A stretch of DNA of 63,631 nt, filler included, from Octopus bimaculoides (taxonomy: Eukaryota), in the NCBI RefSeq assembly GCF_001194135.2. It is 7 parts of 7 records of this genome, joined end to end, with 100 filler letters (N's around TTAATTAATTAA, not from the genome) between each part and the next. Parts side by side here need not be neighbours in the genome. Positions count along the whole stretch, not along the records: positions 1 to 12,656 come from NC_068986.1; 6 more parts are not named here. The stretch is one strand, 5' to 3'. The notes under the pieces were generated by a model. That model was given only the letters and a program-made list of their open reading frames with translations. It had not been told where the DNA came from and ran no database searches. A program made the translations under genes and the position numbers. This document shows, one piece after another, positions 1 to 12,700 of the stretch (positions are counted from its first letter, which is position 1; every line of letters starts with the position of its first letter).

Positions 1-148
1 AATCACGTGTTTTCACGAATGTACTAACGAGATTTGCTCAGATATTCTCATTTAAATATGAATAGGTGATTACGGGCGGTTTTGGGCGGCTTGGTTACAT
101 GAACCAAAATTTTTTCGGGCGGCTTTGGGCGGTTTGGTAACGAAAGGG
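1..148. mobile_element. piggyBac-like DNA transposon/MITE terminus
   Basis: Ends ...CGAAAGGG followed by TTAA (149-152), i.e. the TTAA-CCC end rule. Two subterminal GGGCGG-Y-TTTGGGCGG repeats at ~74-89 and ~117-132. It abuts Tx1 sequence exactly at a TTAA that is uninterrupted in the sister copy (CCCTTAAGCGAGCC at ~6091-6104). Confidence 0.7.
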
Positions 149-2180
149 TTAAGCGAGCCACAAAATACAAGTCAGTTAGATTTAGTATAGGCTTAGCTAA
201 GAAGGAATGTAGCATAGGCGATGGTCTAGTTAAGGAGTTAGATAAAGCCATGGAGAATGGTAATGCGGACCGGGTGAAGGCCAAGAGACTGGAATTAAAC
301 CAGCACCTCGAAAGCCAACACAAGGGAAGTATTATCAGAGCAAAAATACGTGCAATGGGTTGCGAAGGAATCAAAGCTGCTGGATGGGCCCCGAGTGGTG
401 GAGGCTCAACGGAGTAATGACTCCATCATTCGGTCTGTGGCGAACCTGCAGGGCGTATTGGTAGACGATCCCGAGATGTGTGAGGCCTTTCAGGAGCACT
501 TCGCTCGGCTTTTTGGGAGTGATGGCAAGCCGCGTGGTAGGGAAGACCTCGAGAGCTTCCTTGCCAGGCTGCCACGCCTCTCGGGGCCGAATGCAGAGGC
601 TTGTGAGGGACCGATCACGACTGAGGAGATAATCGAGGTGTTGATGAACTGTGGGAGGGGCAAATTGCCGGGACTCGATGGCCTACCCTATGAATTATAT
701 AAAAGTATGCCAGACTTGCTCAGACACCTGTTGGCTTGTGTGTACACAAACTGGCAACAGAATGGGTTTATTCCCAGATCTGTGCGCCGGGGAGTGGTGA
801 CACTAGTCAGGAAGGACCCGAGCAAGGGGGATTGTTTAGATAACTTTAGGCCCATCACTCTGTTAAATACAGAAGTGAAGATTTTGGCCAAGGTATTAGC
901 GAAAAGGTTGGCGCATGTCGCGGATGGTGTGATCGGGGAGGCACAGACATGTGCCATCCCGGGTAGGACCATCCAGGATAATCTCCATCTTATATGCTAT
1001 ATCATAGAGAGGTTTGGGGCTAAGACTGGCAGAGGGGTGGCTTTGGTGCATTTAGACCAAGCTAAGGCTTTCGATAGGGTCGACCATCGATACCTGATGA
1101 GTGTTCTTGCAAGGTTTGGATACTCCTGGATGGTGATTGGATGTGGTCTCTGTTTGCAAGACAAATGTTCCCCAAGTTCGCCAGTATGGGCGCAAAGGAA
1201 TCTTGGTGCTTTCACAGTCCGAGGTTGAGTTTGTGGTACACGGAGTGCCATAAGGCTCTCCTGTTACTCTGACGCTTGGGCAATGCCAGTGGCAGGGGTT
1301 CTACAGCATTCTTTTACAGAGGGTTAGTAGAGGCAGAATGTGACGATGGCCTGGGATGACTCTGGGTCTTGGATCTATTGAACTCGACAGCCTGTTCTTT
1401 CGTACATCCGGGTTGAAGTCGTTGGATAATTTCCAAATGTCTTTGACCTGGCAATGTTACAGAGGAGCCTTACCCTTTCACGATAAACTCGCAAGACATG
1501 GTATGCAGATATCACCGACCTGACCAAGATGCGAGCAGTATAGGGAAACCGTCCCGCACGCTGTTGTCCAGTGTTCGGGAGTCTCTGAAATGTGGGTTTA
1601 CGTGGAACACCTGTTGTCCAGTGAAGGAAGAGTACAGTTGTCAGCTGAGTCAATTATAAAAATTGACCCGCCAAGTTTGTTATCAAACGAAGGTAAGAAA
1701 TGTTTCCTCACTATAATAGCAGTAGCGAAAGAGGTAGTGTGGAAGACAAGAATGAAAGGGACCAAGACGGGTATTTTCATATCCAGCCAACACCTGGTAA
1801 GATATTTTTCTTTTCATTTGAAAAGAAAAATATGGCTGGAGAGGAAATGTCTGTCGGAGAAAGTGATACAAACAAGATGGAAGTATGTCACTTGAGAGTT
1901 GCGAGTGAAAGATTCCAAATGAATATGCCATAAGTGTCTTTAAAAGTGCCAGTGGTGGGATGGGGCTTGTGGGATCGGAGCATAACCCATTCCCCACTTC
2001 ATCTTTTTGTGTTGCTTTGTTTACTGTATGTCTTATCATTCGATTTTTCCGATTTCACCAATTTTATCATATTCAGATTTTTAATTGTTTCATCTTTAAT
2101 GTAATCCCATTGTTTTAATCTGACCCCAATCAGATTGTGTTGTCCCTTCTTTGTTTAGCCCCTGGTGGGTAATAAAGAGA
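149..2180 (+). mobile_element. Tx1/L1-clade non-LTR retrotransposon, ORF2 3' part (RT plus C-terminal domain), decayed
   Basis: ORF 350-1228 has LPGLDGLPYELY, FRPITLLNTEVKILAK, QTCAIPGRTIQDN and LDQAKAFDRVDH. C-terminal ORF 1590-1895 is followed by a T-rich 3'UTR ending AATAAAGA (~2171-2178). Frameshifts and internal deletions. Confidence 0.88.
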
Positions 2181-2184
2181 TCAT

Positions 2185-3830
2185 ATGTGTAATTCTGCAT
2201 TCGAAGTAAAAAGAGCCATGATGTAATGTATTAGGTCCATTTGTTTTTACATGTATGTTAACATCGTATTATGTCACTGTAACCTTTTTATATTTTTTCC
2301 TCTCTTTCTATACAATGAACATTCTGATGAAGGGAGTGTCTAATTTCTAATATGGGTACTGAAACGGTTCGTAGATGAAAACTTTTAGCATTACCTATGT
2401 ATTGTACGGTTTTTTTTTTGATATGGTATATATACATATCCTTTTCTAATGTACACGTTTTTAATGTAATACATATAAATTTATATCATATCATATCATA
2501 TCATATATATTTACCCACTACATGTTAAATCATACTGTATGTTTATAAATTGTAATGTATTGTCTTAAATTGTCAAATATTTTTATACAACTGGGAAACT
2601 ATGCATGTTTATAAATATTTTTAAATAAATATTTTAAACATTCATGATATTTCTGAAGTTTATATCATTGTATATGCCTGTATACTTTATTTTACCTTAC
2701 TTTTTAGACATTTTAGAGACTTAAAACTATATATTTATTGATTCTTGAATGAATTGAACACACCCGCACACACACATATATTAAATCTTGTGTTGGATAT
2801 ACGGTATTGTTCCTGTGGTTTCCACCCTTATGCATCCATTCTTACTATAATTTGAATTCTAGCTCATGCTGAGCACTTCAACTCTAGCCCGTTTTTATGT
2901 ATTGTTATATCAACAATATCTAATTATACAAAAAATTACAGTTTATACTCAGCTCGTTGGAGCACTTCAAAACGGACTGGATAAAATGGAGAAACAACAT
3001 TTGGGAATCTCTACTAGAAATATACCAATCCCACCCAAGAATATATATATGGAAACTCTCCTACAAAAAACGAGTGAGTTTATTAATAGACTTAGATGGC
3101 GTGCTTTTTACCTCGATATGTCCAGAAATTCAAGGATAACGAAAGAACCCAGCCTAATAGGCAATCGAGCTGAACCTGAAATCTCTGAAAATTTTAATTT
3201 AAAATCTTACAGGAACACTCCACCAAACTCCGATCTTGCAAAGTTTGAAAAAGACTTAATACACATGATAAAAAAACCTTAAATATTCAAACCATGTATC
3301 AATTGATCCAGAATCAATTACAAAAAACAATAGTTAGTCTCAAGAATGATCCCAATCTACACGTACTTTCAGATAAAAATGGAAATATCTACTCTGTGCC
3401 CTTCGAAACCTACGACAAGCTAATCTCCAAGGAACTTCATACCAAGTATAAAATTGATAAAAAATCGGCTCCGTGTGATATAAACAATAGACATTACAAA
3501 CTAATTTCGAAATCGGGAATATTAGATCGAACACAACCGTATGATCCTAAAACTCCACACTGCACATTAAAGGACCATAAGAATGACTTTCTTGCCAAAC
3601 CAACAATACACTTAATCTGCCCAACAAAATCTCACTTGGGTACAATTAGCAAACGTATTCTACATCGGATTATCCCAATGATAAAGAAAAAAACACAACT
3701 CGCTCTATGGGAATCAACAAATAATGTTATAGTTTGGTTCCATAAACATGAGCATAATAAGACTTCATCTTTCGTACAGTTTGATATTTCGAATTATTAC
3801 TCATCGATCTCCCCAATTTTATTTTTGGAA
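2185..3830 (+). mobile_element. Penelope-like element (PLE), 5' region plus N-half of RT, 3'-truncated
   Basis: ORFs 2866-3282 and 3294-: STRNIPIPPKNIY, FINRLRWRAF, LSDKNGNIY, LKDHK, FVQFDISNYYSSI. Upstream are a hammerhead-like motif, an AT-rich spacer and an acceptor-like TACTCAG (2946-2952) before ATG 2986. Confidence 0.85.
2317..2380 (+). ncRNA. Type I hammerhead ribozyme-like motif (degenerate) in PLE 5' region
   Basis: CTGATGA (2324-2330) ... GAAA (2361-2364), C-G-GTT-C-G stem III, GTA triplet (2371-2373), stem I CATT/GATG. Stem II pairs weakly. PLEs are known to carry such motifs. Confidence 0.6.
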
Positions 3831-6427
3831 AAATTGTTACAGTTAGTGAAACCGGCAACGGTTTCCCTGTGTAGGGAAACCTACATGATGGCAGATATGA
3901 GGAGCGAACGAACAGAACAAGAAATCGAAAGAATATGTGAGATTAGGTTAATTCCGGACGAAGATGAACAACCGAGAATTATAAGAAATCAGCCAGCAAC
4001 GTCGAATAGAAATATAAACATAAAAAGCCTTAAAATAATGGAATCAAATGAAAAAGAAAAGGAAAAAACAACAAGAAAAAAGTTAGACCTTGCAGCGGTG
4101 GCTGGTGCCAAACAAAGAAAAGTAAACCTGAGCAACACAGAGAAGCATAAGCAAATAATGAAAAGGGAGGGTCACGGTGTCATTGCAACCCCTCCCCAAA
4201 GTTTCCTGGCAAAAATAGAAAGGGAGACTATCATCTTTAAAACATACAACACAAAAGAGAGGAAAATAGATTACGTCTCAGAAGCAGAGATTGAGAAGTG
4301 CCTAAAGCCTGTATGGCAAAAAAATCACTTACATCGCCAGAGGCAAGAGATATGCTACTGTTGAGGTGAGAATGGAGTCAAAGTAAACTGCCCAACTCCA
4401 TTCAGTGGAGCCTCTGAAGACAGAAAATGCGGTTCTCCTACCACTGCACATAGGTAGGAGAACATCGCAAATAACGATCAACNNNNNNNNNNNNNNNNNN
4501 NNNNNNNNNNNNNNNNNNNNNNNNNNNNATTGGATGCAACTGTTATTGAGCCAAGACTGTGGTAACGGCCAGGCCCTGAAAGTAATAATACAGGTGGAAC
4601 AGACCACACTAGAAGAGATAATCAAAAGTTTTGAGGTTGGTGGGACACGACTGGTTGTGTCAGTGGAAGGCCGCCAACCTCATTGCTTCCAGTGTGGGAA
4701 GAAGGGCCACCTCAGGGTGGACTGTAAACAGAACATAGCGGAGAAAAAAACCAGCCAGGAAGAAACGGAGGAAAAAAGAAAGGAACCTGAAGTAGTGGAG
4801 GAGAAACAAAAGGAACAGGAAGCTAAAAAGGAACCAACACCAGTTGCAGTGGAAAAGGCTAGAGAGGGTTGGACTACTGTGTCCAATAAAAGAAAATTGA
4901 AACAACCCTCCCCAACAAAAAACAAGCAAGAACAGAAAAAAACCAAAAAGCGGGAACCCAAAGAAAAAACAGTTGCTACATGGTGGTTTGAACCACAAAC
5001 AGAGAGCTTATGAACCACCTGACAACTATCGAAAAAAGAAAAGTGAGAAAAATAGAATCAAAAAATGGCAAAGCCATTTATAGAACAAGGAAATTATTCA
5101 ACGTATTTAACAACAACTACAGAAATGATGTTGGAGCCCCAAGATTGGACTATGTTCCAACTATGTCGGAGAATTTTATACCTCCAACTCCACAGGCCTC
5201 AAATGGAGTGGAAAAGGCGGGGGTTTCCCCGCCTCCAGACACCGACTAAGGTAAGACATTCATGGCTATTCGTATTGGTTGTTTAAATGTACGCTGCCTG
5301 TCGTCGAGTTGGAAGCAAGGGCGCTTCCTAAATGACATCATGTCGCGAAATTTGGATGCGATTGCTGCCACAGAAACCCGGATAAGCAGGCCAAGAGATC
5401 TGCTCCCCCTCTTGAACGCCTACGAGAGATACGTCTCTCCATATCTTTCAGGAGGCGGGGGGTGGGGGTGTTGGTCTTTATAAAAAGGGACCATGTTCCT
5501 GAGGTAAAGTCTGTCTTTATTGATCCAGAAGGCAGGCTGGTCGTCCTGGATTTCACATTCTGTTGTGGTAAAACAGTCAGGTTTATGCACCCATTTCAAC
5601 TGGTTTACAGAGGCAATATTTCCGTGACTTCAAGAAATTCCTTGCTACGTCGCATTCTTTAGTCGTGTTAGGTGACTTCAACACAATTGACGACGAGCGT
5701 GTTGATTGTGTCGGCTCGAGAACAGACAGAACTGCGAATCCTGGCTTTCGGGATCTGCTCAGCCACTTTCAGCTGGTAGACCCGTATAGGCTGGAACACC
5801 CAAAAGCTCCACTGTGGACATGTTCAAGTAGCAATGGGTCTTCCAGGTCTTATTTAGATAGGATATTGATAACAAAAATGGGATAAAGATATAGTTAAGT
5901 GTCCACAGTTTTACCCAGTCAGCTACAGTGACCACAAACGAGCTGACTGTAGATAAGATGTATAGACAGGTATCTGGCTACTGGAAACTCAATAAGTCCT
6001 TATTGGCGATTAAGGAGTACAGAAAGCGGATCAAGTTAATAATTCAAAGGGCTTTAACAAGTACCATCATTACTAATAAATGGTGATATACCCTTAAGCG
6101 AGCCACAAAATACAAGTCAGTTAGATTTAGTATAGGCTTAGCTAAGAAGGAATGTAGCATAGGCAATGATCTAGTTAAGAAGCTAGAGAAAGCCATGGAG
6201 AATGGTAATGCGGACCGGGTGAAGGCCAAGAGACTGGAATTAAACCAGCACCTCGAAAGCCAACACATGGGAAGTATTATCAGAGCAAAAATACGTGCAA
6301 TTGGTTTGCAAAGGAAACAAAGCTGCTGGATGGGCCCGAGTGGTGGAGGCTCAAAGGGGTAATAACTCCATTAATCGAACTGTGGCGAACCTTCAAGGCG
6401 TTTTGATAAACGAACCCAAGGAGATGT
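3831..6427 (+). mobile_element. Tx1/L1-clade element with 5'UTR, ORF1 (CCHC knuckle) and APE endonuclease; 3'-truncated before RT
   Basis: ATG 3885. ORF 4405-5013 has CFQCGKKGHLRVDC. ORF2 from 5262: RIGCLNVR, ATETR, LGDFN, SYLDRIL, YSDHK, GYWKLN. 6093-6427 is near-identical to 149-480. Confidence 0.88.
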
Positions 6428-6916
6428 ATAATAATAATAATAACTATTCACCTCAACAGAAATATAAAAACAATAAAAATTGCTCATGCAAAAATAAAAA
6501 AATATGCCCTTTACAAGGCCATTGTAAAAGACTTAATATAGTATATAAATGCATAGTCACAGTAATTAATAATTCACATAAAATGGTATACATAGGGAGT
6601 TCTATTAATTTTAAACGAAGATATCTAGCGCATATACATTCATTTAAATAATAATACAACTTCATTAGCCACAGACATACAGAAACTCAATAAAAATGAA
6701 ATTAATTATAAATTGGACTGGTCAATAATAGATTCTGTCATACCATATACACATAAATCAAATAATTGCCGTTTATGCACATTAGAATCACTGCATATAT
6801 TACTATATAAATTTGACAATTTAATAAATTACAAGTCAGACGCGATATCATCATGTAAACATAGGTACTACAAAACCTTTAAATATTATTATAGATCCAA
6901 AAATAAGGTAGAATAG
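6428..6916 (+). mobile_element. PLE GIY-YIG endonuclease 3' fragment
   Basis: CSCKNKKICPLQGHC, VYKCIV..YIGSS.NFKRRY..H, then WSII..NNCRLCTLE..LIN.KSD..SSCKH. One stop interrupts it. Starts at an (ATA)n run. Confidence 0.85.
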
Positions 6917-7066
6917 AAAAAATACGTGTGTATTTGTATAAGCATTTGTATCGATATGTAAAAAAAGCATGTATATATGTGTGCATGTGTATATGTATAC
7001 ATATATATATATATATATGTATACATATACACATGAACGCATATATACATATATACTTTTTTATCA

Positions 7067-9372
7067 TTGGCTCTTCGAGCATTTCATACAGGCTGCATTA
7101 TGAATAAATACTGTTTGGGTTTTTCAACGAAGAATGTCCCCATGCCTTCGAAGAAAGCATATATGGAGTCGCTTATCCACAAAACCACTGAATTTATTAA
7201 TAGACTAATATGGCGTGTTTTCTTTTACGAGCTAAAAAGGAAAGATGGAACCAGAAAGGGTACTGTGGAAAATGACCAACCTGATTTGAGAAATTCCTAC
7301 AACCTCAAATCCTATAGGAACCCACCATCTAACCCCGATGTCGCTAAGTTCGAGCGTGATTTGCTGAATATGATTAAGAAATTGAAGTTCTCTAGCTATA
7401 CGAATCAATTCCAGAAATTGCTATCTGATAAAATATCGGAGATGAGATCCTCTCCAAATCTGCATGTACTATCGGATAAAACTAGTAATATCTATTCAGT
7501 ACCACCTGACCTTTATGATAAACTGATAATGAAGGAATTGAATTCCGGATACAAGCATGCTAAAAAGGATGCGTTAAATAGCATTAATGAGAACCAATTA
7601 GAGATCATATCAAATTTAGGCTTATTGGATAGAACCCAGCCTTACACTCCTAAAACCCCACATGCTCTTTTAAAGGACCATAAACTTGATTTTATGTCAA
7701 ACCCATCGATTAGATTAATATGTCCGACCAAATCGGATTTGAGCCGAATTAGCAAATCGGTAATCGACCGTATTATTCCTGTTATAAGAGGCAAGGTTCA
7801 ACTCCCATTATGGACTTTTACAGGGGATGTCATTATCTGGTTTGATTCCCTTAGGGATAAAACATCTCTTAGCTTCCTATAATTCGATATTTTGAATTAC
7901 TATAACTCGATATCCCCCATACTATTAAATAAGGCCTTGATTTTCGCCCGAAAAATTTTTTGATTTATCAAGTATGGACATTGACATTATCTTAGCTGCT
8001 AGGGAGACCCTTATATCATACAACGAAGTTGAATGGCAAAGGGTGGACTCAACAGGTTTTTTTGATATTACTATGGGGTCATCAGATTCCGCACAGATGA
8101 CGGACCTAGTCGGGCTATACCTCCTTTCGCAAATTAAGGCCAGTTTTCCCCTTCTTACTGGTGGACTATAAAGGAATGATGCCCTTTTAGCAGTAAGGGG
8201 TAGATCTAAATCTGTTTTAAATAGGTTGAGGACTTCTTCAACCTAGATATTATATTTGATATTAACTCCAGGAAAATAAATCTCCTGGACATGACATTGT
8301 GCCTGGATAATGGTCTATTTTGCCCATTCTGTAAACCTAATAAATCTCTGTCATATTTAAACGTTTCATCAAATCGTCCAATATCTACAATAGATAGTAT
8401 TGTTACGGGCATTTCGATTAGAATATCAAATCTATCATCAAACGAAGAAATTTTTAACCAGCACGCGCCAGTTTATAATAACGCTCTTGAGGCAAGCAGC
8501 TTCAAAACCAGAATTTCATATATACCTAACACAAGATTTAAAAATAAGATGGCAGGTTCACCACCCAACTATATTGTGTTCGATCGGTGTGGAGGTAAGA
8601 CATTTTTTAGTAGTAACCGTTGTAAGCAATTTTTTAGAAACAGGACTGGGAACGATGGAAATATAAATAAAAATAAAAATAAGGACACTTTCAATAGGCA
8701 TACGATACAGGAAAATACTAATATGGGGATATTTAAAACAAAAGTTTCGCGACCCAGAATAAGAGAAGTAATTTGGTTCACCCCCCCCCCNNNNNNNNNN
8801 NNTTCCCTCAGGGTAAGAAATTTACCAAAAATGTTTTTTAAGATCCTGGAAAATAATTTTCCTAGGGACCACAAATACTATAGTATTTGTAACAGGTCTA
8901 CAATTAAGTGTTCCTACTCTGGAATGCCTAATTTAGCATCCATTATTGCCTCTTTAAATAGAAACAAGATAAATAAGTTAAAGCTATGCGAATATCCGTC
9001 TAAGGGATACCCTGTTTCTAATAAAACCAACTATAAACCACACAACGATAGTGGGACGGGCTCTTCATTCCCTCGGATTGTGCCTAAATCTGGGAATGAG
9101 ATAAGTGAAATGGCTGATAAGAATAAATTTGTAAGGGCGGTGACTAACGTTGGAAATAATCTTAAGGGTGGCCGTAAAAAATTATGTAATTGTAGAGAAC
9201 CTTTTTTTATGTCCTCTCAGCGGACTTTGTTTGTCCACAAACGTCGTGTATAAATGCATAGTCAGAGACAAGGACAAACAAAATAAGTTTTATATTGGAA
9301 GTTCAGTGAATTTTAAAGCCAGGTATAGAGCACACATGAGTTCTTTCTCAAATGAGAAATATCATAATTCAG
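7067..9372 (+). mobile_element. Penelope-like element, near-complete RT plus start of GIY-YIG, decayed
   Basis: LGFSTKNVP, FDILNYYNSI, DITMGSSDSAQMTDLVGLYLL, GGL*RNDA (YRDD position), LLDMTL, IWFTPP, CPLSGLC..VYKC..YIGSS. Acceptor-like TTCATACAG (7083-7091) before ATG 7100. Confidence 0.9.
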
Positions 9373-11375
9373 CTGCGGTCTAAAAGGCCATATCAGGTTG
9401 GACTATAAGACCAAAGAGCAAGAAGAAGCGGTGGATGAATCAAATGAAGAGGCACCTGTAACAACACAAGAACCAGAGACAACACCAAGGTCGACCAGAG
9501 AACACTAAGGTCGACAGAAGAGAGTGAAGAGAAAGATAGAGAGGAGGGGTGGTCGTCTGTACTTAAAAAAAAAAGAAAAAAACACAGACCGCCCCCACCA
9601 AACTAAATCTTAAAAAAAAAAGAGTGAAGAGGAAAATGAAAATACATATATGGCCATCAAGGCCTCTAATAATAGACTTTTGAACTGTTTGGCAGCTATT
9701 GCGTCTGCCAAACGAGTAGAAAAAACAACTTCAAAAGACTTTTTCATTTATAAGATAGGCCAGAAGGATTACGGACGGATTAAGTCCGAATTCTTTTATG
9801 ATGTAGGCCCTCTCAGGATGGATTTTTCTCCATACATTTACGAGGGCTGTCCAAATACGGGAAGACCCCGAGGAAAGGAGAAGGAAAAAGAAGAATCGCC
9901 GAACCAGTGATGCGAGGTAAGTGATGGAGTCAATTCATGTAGGTTATTTAAATGTGCATAGCCTGGTGACAGGCTGGAAGCAAGGTCGTTTCCTTAATGG
10001 CATCAGGTTGCGTGATTTGGATGTTGTTGTTGCTACAGAGACCCGGTTGAGAGGGCCAAGAGATCTGCTCCCCCTGTTGAATGGCTACGAGAGTTTTTTT
10101 CTCTCCAGGCTGTCCTTCTAGGGGGAGTGGGGTGTTGGTCCTATTAAAAAGAAACCAGGTTTCTGAGAAAAAGTTAATTTTTTCAGATCCAGAAGGTAGG
10201 CTGGTCGTCATGGACTTGACGCTCAGCCATGGTAAAGTTTTCAGACTGGTTGCAATTTATGCACCCCACCCAACCCGGCAAAGTGATTTTTTTCGGTATC
10301 TAGAGAAGTTTCTCAGTACATCACATTCTTTAGTTGTGCTAGGAGACTTCAACACAATTAGCGAGGCACGTGTAGATTATGTTGGCTCAAATACTACTAG
10401 AAAAGGTAATTCTTGCTTCCTGGATCTGCTAAGCCGGTTTGAGCTGGCAGACCCTTATAGGTTGGAATTTCCGAACACTCCAATGTGGACTTGGTCAAAT
10501 AGTGACGGATCTTCCAGGTCATACATAGTGTTAATTAGAAAAGTAAATAGAAATATAGCTAAGTGTCTACAGTTTTACCCAGTCAGCTACAGTGATCATA
10601 AAATGATCACTTGGAGGCTCGACATAGATAAGCGATATACTAGAGGCTCCAGCTACTGGAAACTTAATACGTCCCTTATGGCGATTAAGGAGTACAGAGA
10701 TCGGATTAGTTTGTTGATTCAGAGGGCATTAACCGGCGCCATTATTAATAATAAATGGTGGTATGCCCTCAAACGAGCCATTAAATGTGAGTCTGTTAGA
10801 TATAGCATAAGTTTAGTGGCCAGAGAGCGTAGGAGGGAAACAGTTTTAGTTAAGGAATTAGAGGAAGCAATGAGAACTGGCTCTGCGACTCAGGTGACGG
10901 CCAAGAGACTGGCATTAAACCAGCACCTCGAAGCCAAACACATGGGTTGCATTGTCAGGGCTAGAATTCATGCTATGGGTTGTGAGGGAATCAAGGCCGC
11001 AGGATGGACCCAAGTGGTGGAAGCCCAACGTGGTAATGATGCTACAATTCGATCTTTGACGAACCAACAAGGTAAGTTGATAAACGAACCCGAGGAGATG
11101 TGTGAGCCTTTTCAGGAGCACTTTGCCCAGCTTTTCGATGGGGGCGGCAGGCCAGATAGCAGGAGGGACCTAACGGACTTCCTCGCCGGGCTGCCACGTC
11201 TGTTGGTGCAGGACGTGAAGAGCTGTGAAGGGCCGATCACACCTGAGGAAGTAATTGAGGTGATGGCAGACTGCAGCGCGGGTAAGCTGCCAGGACTGGA
11301 TGGTTTACCCTACGAGTTGTATAAAAGTATGCCAGACTTGTTCGGACACCTACTGGCAAATGTCTACACAAACTA
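9372..11375 (+). mobile_element. Tx1/L1-clade element (second subfamily): ORF1 from zinc knuckle, APE, start of RT; truncated at both ends
   Basis: Begins CGLKGHIRLDY (knuckle remnant). ORF2 from 9924: VGYLNVH, ATETR, LGDFN, YSDHK, SYWKLN, KLPGLDGLPYELYK. Clearly more diverged from the other two Tx1 copies than they are from each other. Confidence 0.87.
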
Positions 11376-12427
11376 CATAAAATATGGGGAATGTTTTTAA
11401 TTTGACCCGACTGAAGTTTAAAACGAAGGTTTTTACTTCACTTATTAGGGAACTTTTGTATGCTGACGATTGTGATCTTGTCAGTCATTCTGAAATAGGT
11501 CTGCAATTTCTTGTATCTGCATTTGATGCAGCTTGTGATGATTTTGGCCTGACCATCAAGCTGAAAACAACAGCTGTAATGTATCAACCTGTGCATGTTG
11601 CTGTTTGTAACCCCACTAAAATTTTTGTTCAGAGAAAGTTACTTGAGGTTGTCAATTCATTTGTCTACTTGGGAAACTCTGTTCAAGATGATGGAAATCT
11701 TGATACGGAAATACACCTGCGAATTCAAAGGGCAGCAAAAGCATTTGGTGGCTTGGAGTCGCACGTCTGGCGTCAGCGACATATAAATAACAATACAAAG
11801 CTGGCTCTTTACAAATCATTTGTCTTACCATCCCTATTGTATCCCTGTGAAACTTGGACTTGTTATGAAAGGCATTTTAAACTGTTAGTACAATTCCACC
11901 AAAAATGCCTTTGTCATATTTTAAAAATTAAATGGAATTCTTTTACTCCAAACAGAGATATCCTTGCATCTGCAGGCATCCCCTCAATTAAAGCTATGAT
12001 TTTGAGGAACCAATTGAGATGGTGTGGCCATATTGTTCGAATGGCAGATGAACGCATGCCGAAACAGCTGTTTTATGGTGAGCTTGCAGAGGGGAAACGA
12101 TATCGGCATAAACCTAAAAAAAAGGTTTAAAGATGGCATAAGGACTACTATGAAGTCACTTGGAATGGCTCCAGAAGATATAGAAACCCTCGCTTCAGAT
12201 CGAGTTGGATGGCGAACAAATGTGTGGAATGGAATGAAAGCATTTGAAAAGGCCAGAATAATGCAAGGAAAGTCAGGTATACATCTAAAGATGTATAACC
12301 CACTTTCTACTAAAGTGGTGACCCCGACTAAGGAATGACTGCAACCACGACGATCTGGACTGGTCAGCATCATCATTGGTATGAGCAACACGAGTTTCCA
12401 GCCGCCGACGCCATCATCATCATCATA
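11376..12427 (+). mobile_element. RTE-clade (BovB-like) LINE, 5'-truncated, with (CAT)n tail
   Basis: YIKY..GNVFNLTRLK, ELLYADDC, FVYLGNS, SLLYPCETWT, LRWCGHIVRM, PKQLFYGEL..GKR..KP. Tail CATCATCATCATCAT at ~12409-12426. Confidence 0.9.
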
Positions 12428-12700
12428 ACTAACGACTTTTTGAACAATTTCACAGTGAGATATTGACTCTATAGCATTTCCGACTATACAAACTCACATT
12501 GTGCCAAGCTGACACAGACGTTTTTTTCTTTCTTTCTGACTATTATTTTCCATTTTCTTTCAGCACGTCAAGGTGGGTTTTCAAAAAAAAAAAAAAGAAA
12601 AAATTTTTTTTTTCCCGCAGACAGTACAAGCTCACAACTAAACACACTACAAAAAANNNNNNNNNNNNNNNNNNNNNNNNNNNNNNNNNNNNNNNNNNNN

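What the first reader, a model, noticed from the sequence alone, without database searches (positions are those of the whole stretch)
149..12427. 12-kb gapless chain of seven co-oriented retroelement fragments from three unrelated classes, mostly 3'-truncated
Seen: Tx1, PLE, Tx1, GIY-YIG, PLE, Tx1 and RTE abut with essentially no host DNA, all on +. If orientations were independent this is (1/2)^6 = 1/64, or 1/32 if the GIY-YIG piece belongs to the first PLE; orientations are mixed elsewhere in the window. Four pieces (PLE 3830, Tx1 6427, PLE 9372, Tx1 11375) lack their 3' ends, and the missing halves are not found downstream. Established: non-LTR copies are normally 5'-truncated with intact 3' ends. 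Inference, three options: (a) one RT reaction started on the RTE tail and serially template-jumped onto broken (e.g. piRNA-sliced) Tx1 and Penelope RNAs; (b) a uni-strand piRNA-cluster-like TE trap; (c) Russian-doll nesting followed by deletion.
Basis: partly seen in the sequence, partly recalled or inferred. Interest (0 to 1): 0.75.

Follow-up and report, generated by a model that had tools for sequence, protein, structure and literature searches.

The report
Same-strand pile-up of retroelement fragments
This 12.6-kb stretch of an octopus-type genome is a dense pile of broken LINE and Penelope-like retroelements that all point the same way; it is most likely ordinary repeated insertion of mobile elements into one another, not a single exotic copying event.

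Summary
The described pieces are real. There are three L1/Tx1-type LINE fragments, three Penelope-like (PLE) fragments and one RTE-like LINE 3' half. All lie on the + strand. Four butt joints carry no filler: 3851-3885 (not 3830), 6427, about 9368 and 11374/5. Four pieces do lack their 3' parts. Both assembly gaps lie inside single elements with collinear flanks. "Gapless" is not shown everywhere: 1896-2985, 6917-7099 and 12428-12656 are unassigned non-coding DNA. "Three unrelated classes" is overstated, because Tx1 and RTE are both LINEs. The source looks like an octopus; the Octopus vulgaris genome is about 66% repeats. Six or seven co-oriented elements (1/32-1/64) are expected many times per genome by chance. 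My best reading (about 0.6) is stepwise nested or adjacent insertions, trimmed by at least one deletion or cut by the piece's edge. Serial template jumping (about 0.05) fails a hallmark of known chimeras, in which upstream partners keep intact 3' ends. No target-site duplication was found, and known chimeras have at most three parts. A one-strand piRNA-cluster trap and assembly chimerism cannot be tested here. Coding-damage "ages" are inconclusive. Interest is low.

The parts
1..149 (.). Left flank, unassigned. It contains four copies of a GGGCGG(C)TTT(T)GG motif.
   Evidence: Homology of Tx1#1 to Tx1#2 starts abruptly at 150. A tandem motif is reported. No similarity to the right flank was found.
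150..2185 (+). Tx1#1: a 5'-truncated L1/Tx1-type LINE with RT, the ORF2 C-terminus, a stop at 1893-1895 and AATAAA at 2171-2176. The 3' boundary is not verifiable.
   Evidence: RVT_1 at nt ~830-1126. Human L1 ORF2p residues 373-639, E=1e-25. 92% identity to Tx1#2 over 149-479. At least 6 coding disruptions.
2186..2985 (.). AT-rich (~28% GC) non-coding DNA of unknown origin. It could be Tx1 3'UTR, PLE#1 5'UTR/pLTR or host DNA.
   Evidence: Composition. No PLE or Tx1 protein homology. No hammerhead or other Rfam family. No significant similarity to the region upstream of PLE#2.
2986..3884 (+). PLE#1: a Penelope-like element from the ORF start to about aa 288-300 of ~806 (early RT). It is 3'-truncated. 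Homology is certain to 3851 and possible to 3884.
   Evidence: tblastn with P0007 gives aa 1-98 and 108-288; P0011 and P0012 extend to 3881/3893. Twin hairpins lie at 3848-3881.
3885..6427 (+). Tx1#2: it starts at or near the ORF1 ATG and has ORF1 (CCHC), a spacer and the APE part of ORF2. It is 3'-truncated before the RT core. It contains assembly gap 4483-4528.
   Evidence: ORF1 homologues P0052 and P0057. zf-CCHC. APE is a second stretch. Alignments to Tx1#1 and Tx1#3 both end at 6427. 4 frameshifts plus 2 stops in 5456-6426.
6428..6968 (+). PLE-G: a 5'-truncated PLE 3' end with GIY-YIG and the complete C-terminus (stop 6914-6916), plus a short 3' non-coding stretch.
   Evidence: P0007 aa 660-713 and 722-806. 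It belongs to a different lineage from PLE#2: pS 0.78, pN 0.33.
6969..7056 (.). (TG/TA)n microsatellite between PLE-G and PLE#2.
   Evidence: TRF. It produces sub-threshold miRNA-family hits in Rfam.
7100..9372 (+). PLE#2: a Penelope-like element from the ORF start to aa ~718 of 806. It lacks the last ~88 aa and the 3'UTR. It contains assembly gap 8791-8802.
   Evidence: P0007 aa 1-288, 290-381, 388-614 and 668-718. 2 stops plus 3 frameshifts. A weak Pfam GIY-YIG hit.
9368..11374 (+). Tx1#3: a separate Tx1 lineage. It is 5'-truncated at the ORF1 CCHC knuckle and 3'-truncated just before the RT core. About 5 nt (TTCAG) is shared with the end of PLE#2.
   Evidence: P0057 aa 270-328 aligns at 9368-9574. 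Exo_endo_phos at nt ~10114-10521. An intact 439-aa ORF at 10081-11400. dN/dS 0.22-0.26 against Tx1#1 and Tx1#2. The alignment to Tx1#1 ends at 11374.
11375..12427 (+). RTE-like LINE: 5'-truncated just upstream of the YADD motif. It has the RT C-terminal half, a decayed C2H2 finger and then (CAT)5, the presumed 3' end.
   Evidence: Homologues carry RVT_1 plus C-terminal C2H2. The peptide matches the N-terminus of Octopus vulgaris P0047. (CAT)5 at 12412-12426. Clade assignment to RTE was not independently tested.
12428..12656 (.). Right flank, unassigned. It ends in A14GA6T10 (12583-12613). It is not the continuation of Tx1#3.
   Evidence: No similarity to the rest of Tx1#1 or to the left flank beyond the shuffle level. 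Only a 7-mer ACAAACT recurs at 12488.

Best explanation
This is a transposon-dense patch built stepwise. At least six independent target-primed retroelement insertions landed inside or next to one another in DNA where insertions are tolerated: three Tx1-type LINEs from two lineages, PLEs from at least two lineages, and one RTE-like LINE. Each later element is 5'-truncated or 5'-complete and cuts its host. Read from the left, one therefore sees a run of hosts that 'lack their 3' ends', each butt-joined to the 5' end of the next guest. The hosts' 3' remainders either lie beyond the end of this 12.6-kb piece or were removed by one or more deletions, including insertion-associated target deletions. 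The shared orientation is chance (about 1/32), or a modest regional orientation filter such as an intron or a one-strand transcribed unit. SHOWN: the identity, strand and extent of the pieces, the sharp joints and the separate lineages. INFERRED: the order of events, the deletions and the reason for co-orientation.
For: All four sharp joints have the form '3'-truncated upstream element | 5'-truncated or 5'-complete downstream element'. That is the left-hand junction expected for a target-primed insertion into an older element. The joints carry 0-5 nt of overlap and no filler. The pieces come from distinct lineages that diverged under purifying selection: PLE#1 and PLE-G against PLE#2 show saturated pS with pN ~0.3, and Tx1#3 against Tx1#1/#2 gives dN/dS ~0.25. 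Tx1#1 and Tx1#2 are one family (93% identity), each with a private frameshift, so they decayed separately in place. Tx1#2's APE region has 6 disruptions where Tx1#3 has 0-1, which suggests different ages. The host looks like an octopus. In the Octopus vulgaris genome ~66% is repeats, with abundant L1-Tx1, RTE and Penelope families and TE hotspots (PMC13282606). PLEs are known for 5' truncation and tandem or complex arrangements (PMC8557442).
Against: No host element is seen to resume after its guest within the piece. After the presumed RTE 3' end at 12427, the next 229 bp are not Tx1#3. After the PLE-G stop, PLE#2 follows rather than Tx1#2. So pure nesting needs either an RTE 3'UTR longer than assumed, further insertions, or deletions. 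No target-site duplications were found. The coding-damage load is statistically homogeneous across pieces (0.7-5.2/kb, chi-square ~4.2, 6 d.f.), so a single age is not excluded. Co-orientation of six elements is only a 3% outcome for a pre-specified locus.
Confidence: 0.6

Rival explanations
1. One-strand piRNA-cluster-like trap. The stepwise accretion is the same, but the locus is a transcribed small-RNA source in which insertions of one orientation are retained by selection. That selection would explain the co-orientation.
For: Six or seven fragments from several active families lie on one strand, with dense truncated TE content. Molluscs express piRNAs widely from TE-rich clusters (PMC6128900).
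Against: No small-RNA data, promoter or cluster extent is available. 12.6 kb is too short to show a regional bias. Chance alone predicts many such runs in a 66%-repeat genome. Mollusc clusters described so far are enriched for other TE types such as Gypsy, DNA transposons and R2.
Confidence: 0.15
2. Assembly chimera. Some joints are mis-joins or collapsed repeats in a gapped, probably short-read-based scaffold made entirely of repeats.
For: The piece contains two estimated-size N gaps, and one of them is oversized by ~12 nt relative to homologues. It consists only of multi-copy TEs, including two 93%-identical Tx1 pieces that overlap by 330 bp in family coordinates. An 11-bp perfect inverted repeat lies 20 nt before gap 1. 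PLE structures are noted to cause WGS assembly problems (PMC8557442).
Against: The four critical joints lie inside continuous sequence, not at N gaps. The elements joined share no long common sequence that would mislead an assembler. Both gaps have collinear flanks within one element.
Confidence: 0.12
3. Serial template jumping. One reverse-transcription run primed on the RTE tail switched successively onto Tx1, PLE, Tx1, PLE and Tx1 RNAs, and the whole 12-kb cDNA integrated at once.
For: The parts are co-oriented and fused directly with 0-5 nt overlaps. The downstream partners are 5'-truncated. Coding damage is not significantly heterogeneous. LINE RTs are documented to make bi- and tripartite chimeras (PMC2104539; bioRxiv 10.1101/2025.02.02.635956).
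Against: In documented chimeras the upstream parts are full-length copies with intact 3' ends. Here four upstream partners are cut internally. No direct repeat flanks 150 and 12427. Five or six jumps and a 12-kb cDNA exceed the known maximum of two jumps. The model needs ad hoc broken acceptor RNAs. Tx1#2 carries 6 disruptions against 0-1 in the homologous part of Tx1#3.
Confidence: 0.05

Closest known systems
Nested transposable-element clusters ('Russian dolls', as resolved by defragmentation tools such as REANNOTATE, PMC2672092)
   Same: Fragments of several families abut directly. Interrupted hosts end exactly where a guest's 5' end begins. The guests are 5'-truncated, as non-LTR and PLE insertions usually are.
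   Different: No host is seen to resume on the far side of its guest inside the piece. No target-site duplications were found. All layers share one orientation.
LINE-mediated template-switch chimeric retroelements (U6/L1; the WEIRD/Mg-SINE/MGL tripartite element; PMC2104539)
   Same: Direct head-to-tail fusion of different retrotranscripts in one orientation. The 3'-most part is a 5'-truncated LINE.
   Different: Known cases have two or three parts. Their upstream parts keep complete 3' ends, and the whole is flanked by a 10-20-bp duplication. Here there are six or seven parts, four upstream parts are 3'-truncated, and no duplication was found.
Uni-strand piRNA clusters (flamenco-type)
   Same: Dense, truncated fragments of many retroelements that share an orientation.
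   Different: Only 12.6 kb is visible. No small-RNA, transcription or boundary evidence is available. Membership is untestable here.
Penelope-like element partial tandems (pLTR architecture; PMC8557442)
   Same: A 5'-truncated PLE 3' end (PLE-G) sits immediately upstream of a PLE that has its ORF start (PLE#2). This is the layout typical of PLE insertions.
   Different: The two belong to different lineages (pS saturated, pN 0.33), so they are not a copy pair from one element. No hammerhead ribozyme was detected.

Membership tests
LINE template-switch chimera | [quoted passage not shown] | tested here: not met
   PLE#1 stops at aa ~288-300 of 806 and PLE#2 at aa 718 of 806. Tx1#2 and Tx1#3 stop before the RT core. 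Only Tx1#1 and PLE-G keep their 3' coding ends.
LINE template-switch chimera | Parts directly joined in the same transcriptional orientation, with downstream parts 5'-truncated | tested here: met
   Sharp joints at 6427, ~9368 and 11374/5. PLE-G, Tx1#3 and RTE are 5'-truncated. All are on +.
LINE template-switch chimera | The whole chimera is flanked by a short target-site duplication | tested here: inconclusive
   No repeat of 7 nt or more links the sequence before 150 to the sequence after Tx1#1's 3' region. The two outer flanks show no similarity above shuffle level. The true ends of a putative chimera are uncertain.
Nested TE insertion | The host element resumes collinearly after the guest's 3' end | tested here: not met
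   12428-12656 is not Tx1#3, and 6917-7099 is not Tx1#2. PLE#1 (aa 1-~295) and PLE-G (aa ~645-806) are collinear and co-oriented around Tx1#2, but ~345 aa are missing and a shared family could not be tested. The region beyond 12656 is unavailable.
Nested TE insertion | The guest is younger than the host | tested here: inconclusive
   Minimum coding disruptions per kb are Tx1#3 0.7, PLE#2 ~2.2, RTE 2.9, Tx1#2 ~4 and PLE#1 1.2. The order is partly consistent (Tx1#3 younger than PLE#2) and partly not. The counts are too small to decide.
Uni-strand piRNA cluster | Strand-biased production of piRNAs from a long transcribed unit | not testable with these tools
   No small-RNA or expression data are available, and only 12.6 kb of sequence is visible.
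Penelope-like element partial tandem (pLTR) | The upstream truncated copy and the downstream copy derive from the same element | tested here: not met
   PLE-G against PLE#2 over 49 codons gives pS 0.78 and pN 0.33, with 55% aa identity.
Penelope-like elements (class assignment of the three PLE pieces) | [quoted passage not shown] | tested here: met
   Collinear alignment to the 806-aa ORF P0007 and to Argonauta hians proteins, E down to 1e-193. A GIY-YIG motif region is present; the Pfam hit is weak, E=0.1.
L1/Tx1-type LINE (assignment of the three Tx1 pieces) | ORF1 with a CCHC knuckle, plus ORF2 with an APE endonuclease and an L1-like RT | tested here: met
   Placement in the Tx1 clade rather than L1 proper was not tested phylogenetically.
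RTE clade LINE (assignment of the last piece) | Phylogenetic placement of the RT in the RTE clade, with a short 3'UTR ending in short tandem repeats | not tested
   Only the RT C-terminal half, a C2H2 tail shared with unnamed homologues and a terminal (CAT)5 are seen. This is consistent with RTE but not diagnostic.

The most novel reading that the evidence does not exclude
All or part of the chain (for example Tx1#3|RTE, or PLE#2|Tx1#3|RTE) is a single cDNA. A LINE reverse transcriptase would have made it by jumping repeatedly onto internally broken retroelement RNAs. That would extend template-switch chimeras from three parts to as many as six or seven and show that acceptor RNAs need not have intact 3' ends.
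Probability: 0.05. Interest if true: 0.7.

Novelty: already known. Interest (0 to 1): 0.15.

Why it matters
If the ordinary reading is right, this is one more example of how repeat-rich cephalopod genomes build up TE clusters. Its main value is practical: truncated, co-oriented fragments should be defragmented before anyone infers unusual mechanisms. It would matter only if comparative or long-read data showed that the whole chain arrived at once. In that case it would be the most complex template-switch retrocopy known. It would also matter if small RNAs showed the locus to be a one-strand piRNA source in a cephalopod.

Tried and rejected
(1) I tried to retrieve the source contig to see beyond 12656. 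Exact-protein look-ups of four window ORFs, two of which span junctions, found nothing. The Octopus vulgaris locus of P0047 gave no DNA because the gene range exceeds 100 kb.

Pasted frames gave only APE and RVT_1. I did not scan the third + frame or the whole minus frames; only minus ORFs of 84 aa or more were scanned, and they were negative.

(3) Rfam found no hammerhead ribozyme or SINE-like RNA. The only hits were microsatellite artefacts. No tRNA was found.

(4) Searches for target-site duplications around Tx1#1, PLE-G, RTE and the whole chain gave only a 7-mer, ACAAACT, at 11368 and 12488. Tx1 sequence does not follow the second copy, so I rejected it.

(5) I tested whether PLE-G plus PLE#2 is a canonical PLE partial tandem. 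I rejected this because they are different lineages.

(6) I considered whether PLE#1 and PLE-G are two halves of one PLE that hosts Tx1#2. They are collinear and co-oriented, but they do not overlap, so a shared family cannot be tested. I keep this only as a possibility.

(7) I used coding damage as an age test. Tx1#2 against Tx1#3 is suggestive (6 against 0-1 disruptions), but overall heterogeneity is not significant.

The organism was inferred later.


Full report
**What the piece is.** The piece is 12,656 nt long, with N runs at 4483-4528 (46 nt) and 8791-8802 (12 nt). GC content ranges from 26% to 52%. The sequence is eukaryotic. The RTE-like peptide closely matches (70% identity by BLASTP) the N-terminus of an Octopus vulgaris protein, P0047. 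The PLE pieces find their named relatives in the cephalopod Argonauta hians. I therefore treat the source as an octopus-type cephalopod. The recent O. vulgaris repeat annotation reports 66% repeats and 12.9% LINEs. It also reports many L1-Tx1, RTE and Penelope families, with full-length copies averaging about 5 kb, and TE hotspots (PMC13282606).

**Assembly gaps (tested first).**
- Gap 8791-8802 lies inside PLE#2. A single tblastn HSP of the full-length PLE protein P0007 (aa 388-614) crosses it in one frame: WFTPPP[XXXX]SLRVRN against WFNPPFSIRVKN. The flanks are collinear and almost contiguous, and the N run is about 12 nt too long.
- Gap 4483-4528 lies inside ORF1 of Tx1#2. One HSP of ORF1 protein P0057 (aa 137-302) crosses it, with about 16-24 residues unaccounted for. 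The flanks are collinear in one gene, but the frame relation cannot be known.
- Neither gap coincides with a junction between elements.

**Identity and extent of the pieces.** Self-comparison and junction alignments define three LINE pieces.
- Tx1#1 runs from 150 to about 2185.
- Tx1#2 runs from 3885 to 6427.
- Tx1#3 runs from about 9368 to 11374.
- Together they carry an APE domain and RVT_1, an L1 ORF2p-like RT (E=1e-25 to human ORF2p residues 373-639), and an ORF1 with a CCHC knuckle and recognisable ORF1 homologues.
- Tx1#1 and Tx1#2 are one family. They are 92-93% identical over a 330-bp overlap, with dN/dS 0.63, and each has a private 1-nt insertion.
- Tx1#3 is a separate lineage: 72% identity and dN/dS about 0.25.

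Three PLE pieces map onto the 806-aa ORF P0007.
- PLE#1 covers aa 1-288 (2986-3851, possibly to 3884).
- PLE-G covers aa 660-806 including the stop codon (6481-6916, starting at 6428).
- PLE#2 covers aa 1-718 (7100-9362/9372).
- Synonymous sites between PLE#1 and PLE#2, and between PLE-G and PLE#2, are saturated (pS 0.85 and 0.78), while pN is about 0.3. These are different lineages.
- PLE-G plus PLE#2 therefore has the layout of a PLE partial tandem (PMC8557442) but is not one.

The last piece (11375 to about 12427) is the C-terminal half of a non-LTR RT, starting just before YADD. It has a decayed C2H2 tail like its homologues and a terminal (CAT)5. RTE is a reasonable label for it, but I did not test that label independently. 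Nothing was detected on the minus strand among its ORFs.

**Junctions.**
- Alignments of Tx1#2 to both other Tx1 copies stop exactly at 6427, where an (ATA)5 run of PLE-G begins.
- The alignment of Tx1#3 to Tx1#1 stops at 11374.
- PLE#2 homology ends at 9362-9373 and Tx1#3 ORF1 homology starts at 9368. This leaves about 5 nt (TTCAG) attributable to either element.
P0052 shows that the Tx1#2 ORF1 start codon lies at about 3885, so Tx1#2 is almost full-length at its 5' end.
- The 2185 'junction' cannot be verified. The stretch 1896-2985 is non-coding, and 2186-2985 is 28% GC with no homology to anything available.
- The chain is therefore gapless at four joints, not throughout.

**Missing 3' parts.** PLE#1, Tx1#2, PLE#2 and Tx1#3 all lack their 3' parts, and these are not found downstream in the piece. 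The 229 bp after the presumed RTE end are not Tx1. What lies beyond 12656 could not be examined.

**Significance of the co-orientation.** Six independent elements (seven if PLE-G is counted separately) share a strand with probability 1/32 (or 1/64). In a multi-gigabase genome (my estimate from general knowledge) that is two-thirds repeats, with TE hotspots, many such runs are expected. The locus was also picked after the fact. I did not and could not count them genome-wide.

**Mechanism.**
- Every sharp joint has the same form: an upstream element cut internally, followed by an element that is 5'-truncated or 5'-complete. This is what the left side of successive target-primed insertions into older elements looks like. 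The alternative source of such joints is deletion.
- The simplest account is therefore stepwise accretion. The 3' remainders would lie to the right of the piece or be lost by deletion.
- At least one deletion, or a longer RTE 3'UTR than assumed, is needed, because Tx1#3 does not resume after 12427.
- PLE#1 and PLE-G are collinear and co-oriented around Tx1#2. They could be the two ends of one PLE, with a single deletion creating the 6427 joint. This cannot be tested without overlap or a consensus.

**The template-jump model.**
- It shares co-orientation and direct fusion with known LINE chimeras.
- Those chimeras are defined by full-length upstream parts and a flanking target-site duplication, and they reach at most three parts (PMC2104539).
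- Here four upstream parts are internally cut, and no duplication was found.
- Coding damage gives little help. Tx1#2 has 4 frameshifts and 2 stops where Tx1#3 has none. Minimum-disruption counts across all pieces range from 0.7 to 5.2 per kb and are not significantly heterogeneous (my chi-square is about 4.2 with 6 d.f.).
- A common age is therefore not excluded, and the model survives only at low probability.

**Other rivals.** A one-strand piRNA cluster would use the same accretion mechanism plus selection on orientation. Molluscs do have TE-rich piRNA clusters (PMC6128900), but nothing here tests that idea. Assembly chimerism is possible in a gapped, all-repeat scaffold. However, the critical joints lie within continuous sequence, and the joined elements share no long common sequence.

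**Verdict.** This is a known kind of structure and of low interest. That changes only if comparative or long-read data show that the chain arrived in one step.

Noticed in passing
window 3294-4364: A 356-aa open reading frame runs in frame from the PLE#1 N-terminal domain straight into Tx1#2 ORF1. This chimeric ORF was created by the junction and is probably fortuitous (a 1-in-3 chance).
   Followed up: partly
window 3848-3881: Two adjacent hairpins share the motif GAAACC/GGTTTC (GAAACCG-GCAA-CGGTTTC and GGTTTCCCT-GTGT-AGGGAAACC). They sit exactly at the PLE#1/Tx1#2 joint. The DNA fold z-score is -3.7. They could be a templated or fold-back repair footprint, or part of PLE#1 with an 8-aa deletion.
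   Followed up: partly
window 4432-4463: A perfect 11-bp inverted repeat (GTTCTCCTACC / GGTAGGAGAAC, 10-nt loop) lies inside Tx1#2 ORF1, 20 nt before assembly gap 1. It makes the minus strand encode a look-alike peptide. It may be why the assembly broke there.
   Followed up: partly
window 149-479 and 6094-6427: Tx1#1 starts 330 bp before the point where Tx1#2 stops, in family coordinates. The two are 93% identical, and each has its own private 1-nt insertion. Together they would make one near-complete element, although Tx1#1 lies upstream.
   Followed up: yes
window 6969-7056: A (TG/TA)n microsatellite gives sub-threshold Rfam hits on both strands to mir-297, mir-466 and other miRNA families. 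This is a low-complexity artefact, not a miRNA gene.
   Followed up: yes
window 12024-12338 (RTE C-terminus) and protein P0047: The RTE C-terminal peptide closely matches (70% identity by BLASTP) the first ~80 residues of an annotated Octopus vulgaris 'hypothetical protein' that otherwise has F5/8 type C domains. That gene model begins in an RTE fragment, either by exonisation or by annotation chimera.
   Followed up: no
window 68-140 and 12583-12613: The left flank carries four copies of GGGCGG(C)TTT(T)GG. The right flank ends in A14GA6 followed directly by T10. Neither was identified, and the A-run could be the tail of a further + strand retroposon.
   Followed up: no
window 9477-9515 and 7729-7775: Short tandem duplications lie inside coding remnants: 20 bp x2 in the Tx1#3 ORF1 tail and 24 bp x2 in PLE#2.
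   Followed up: no
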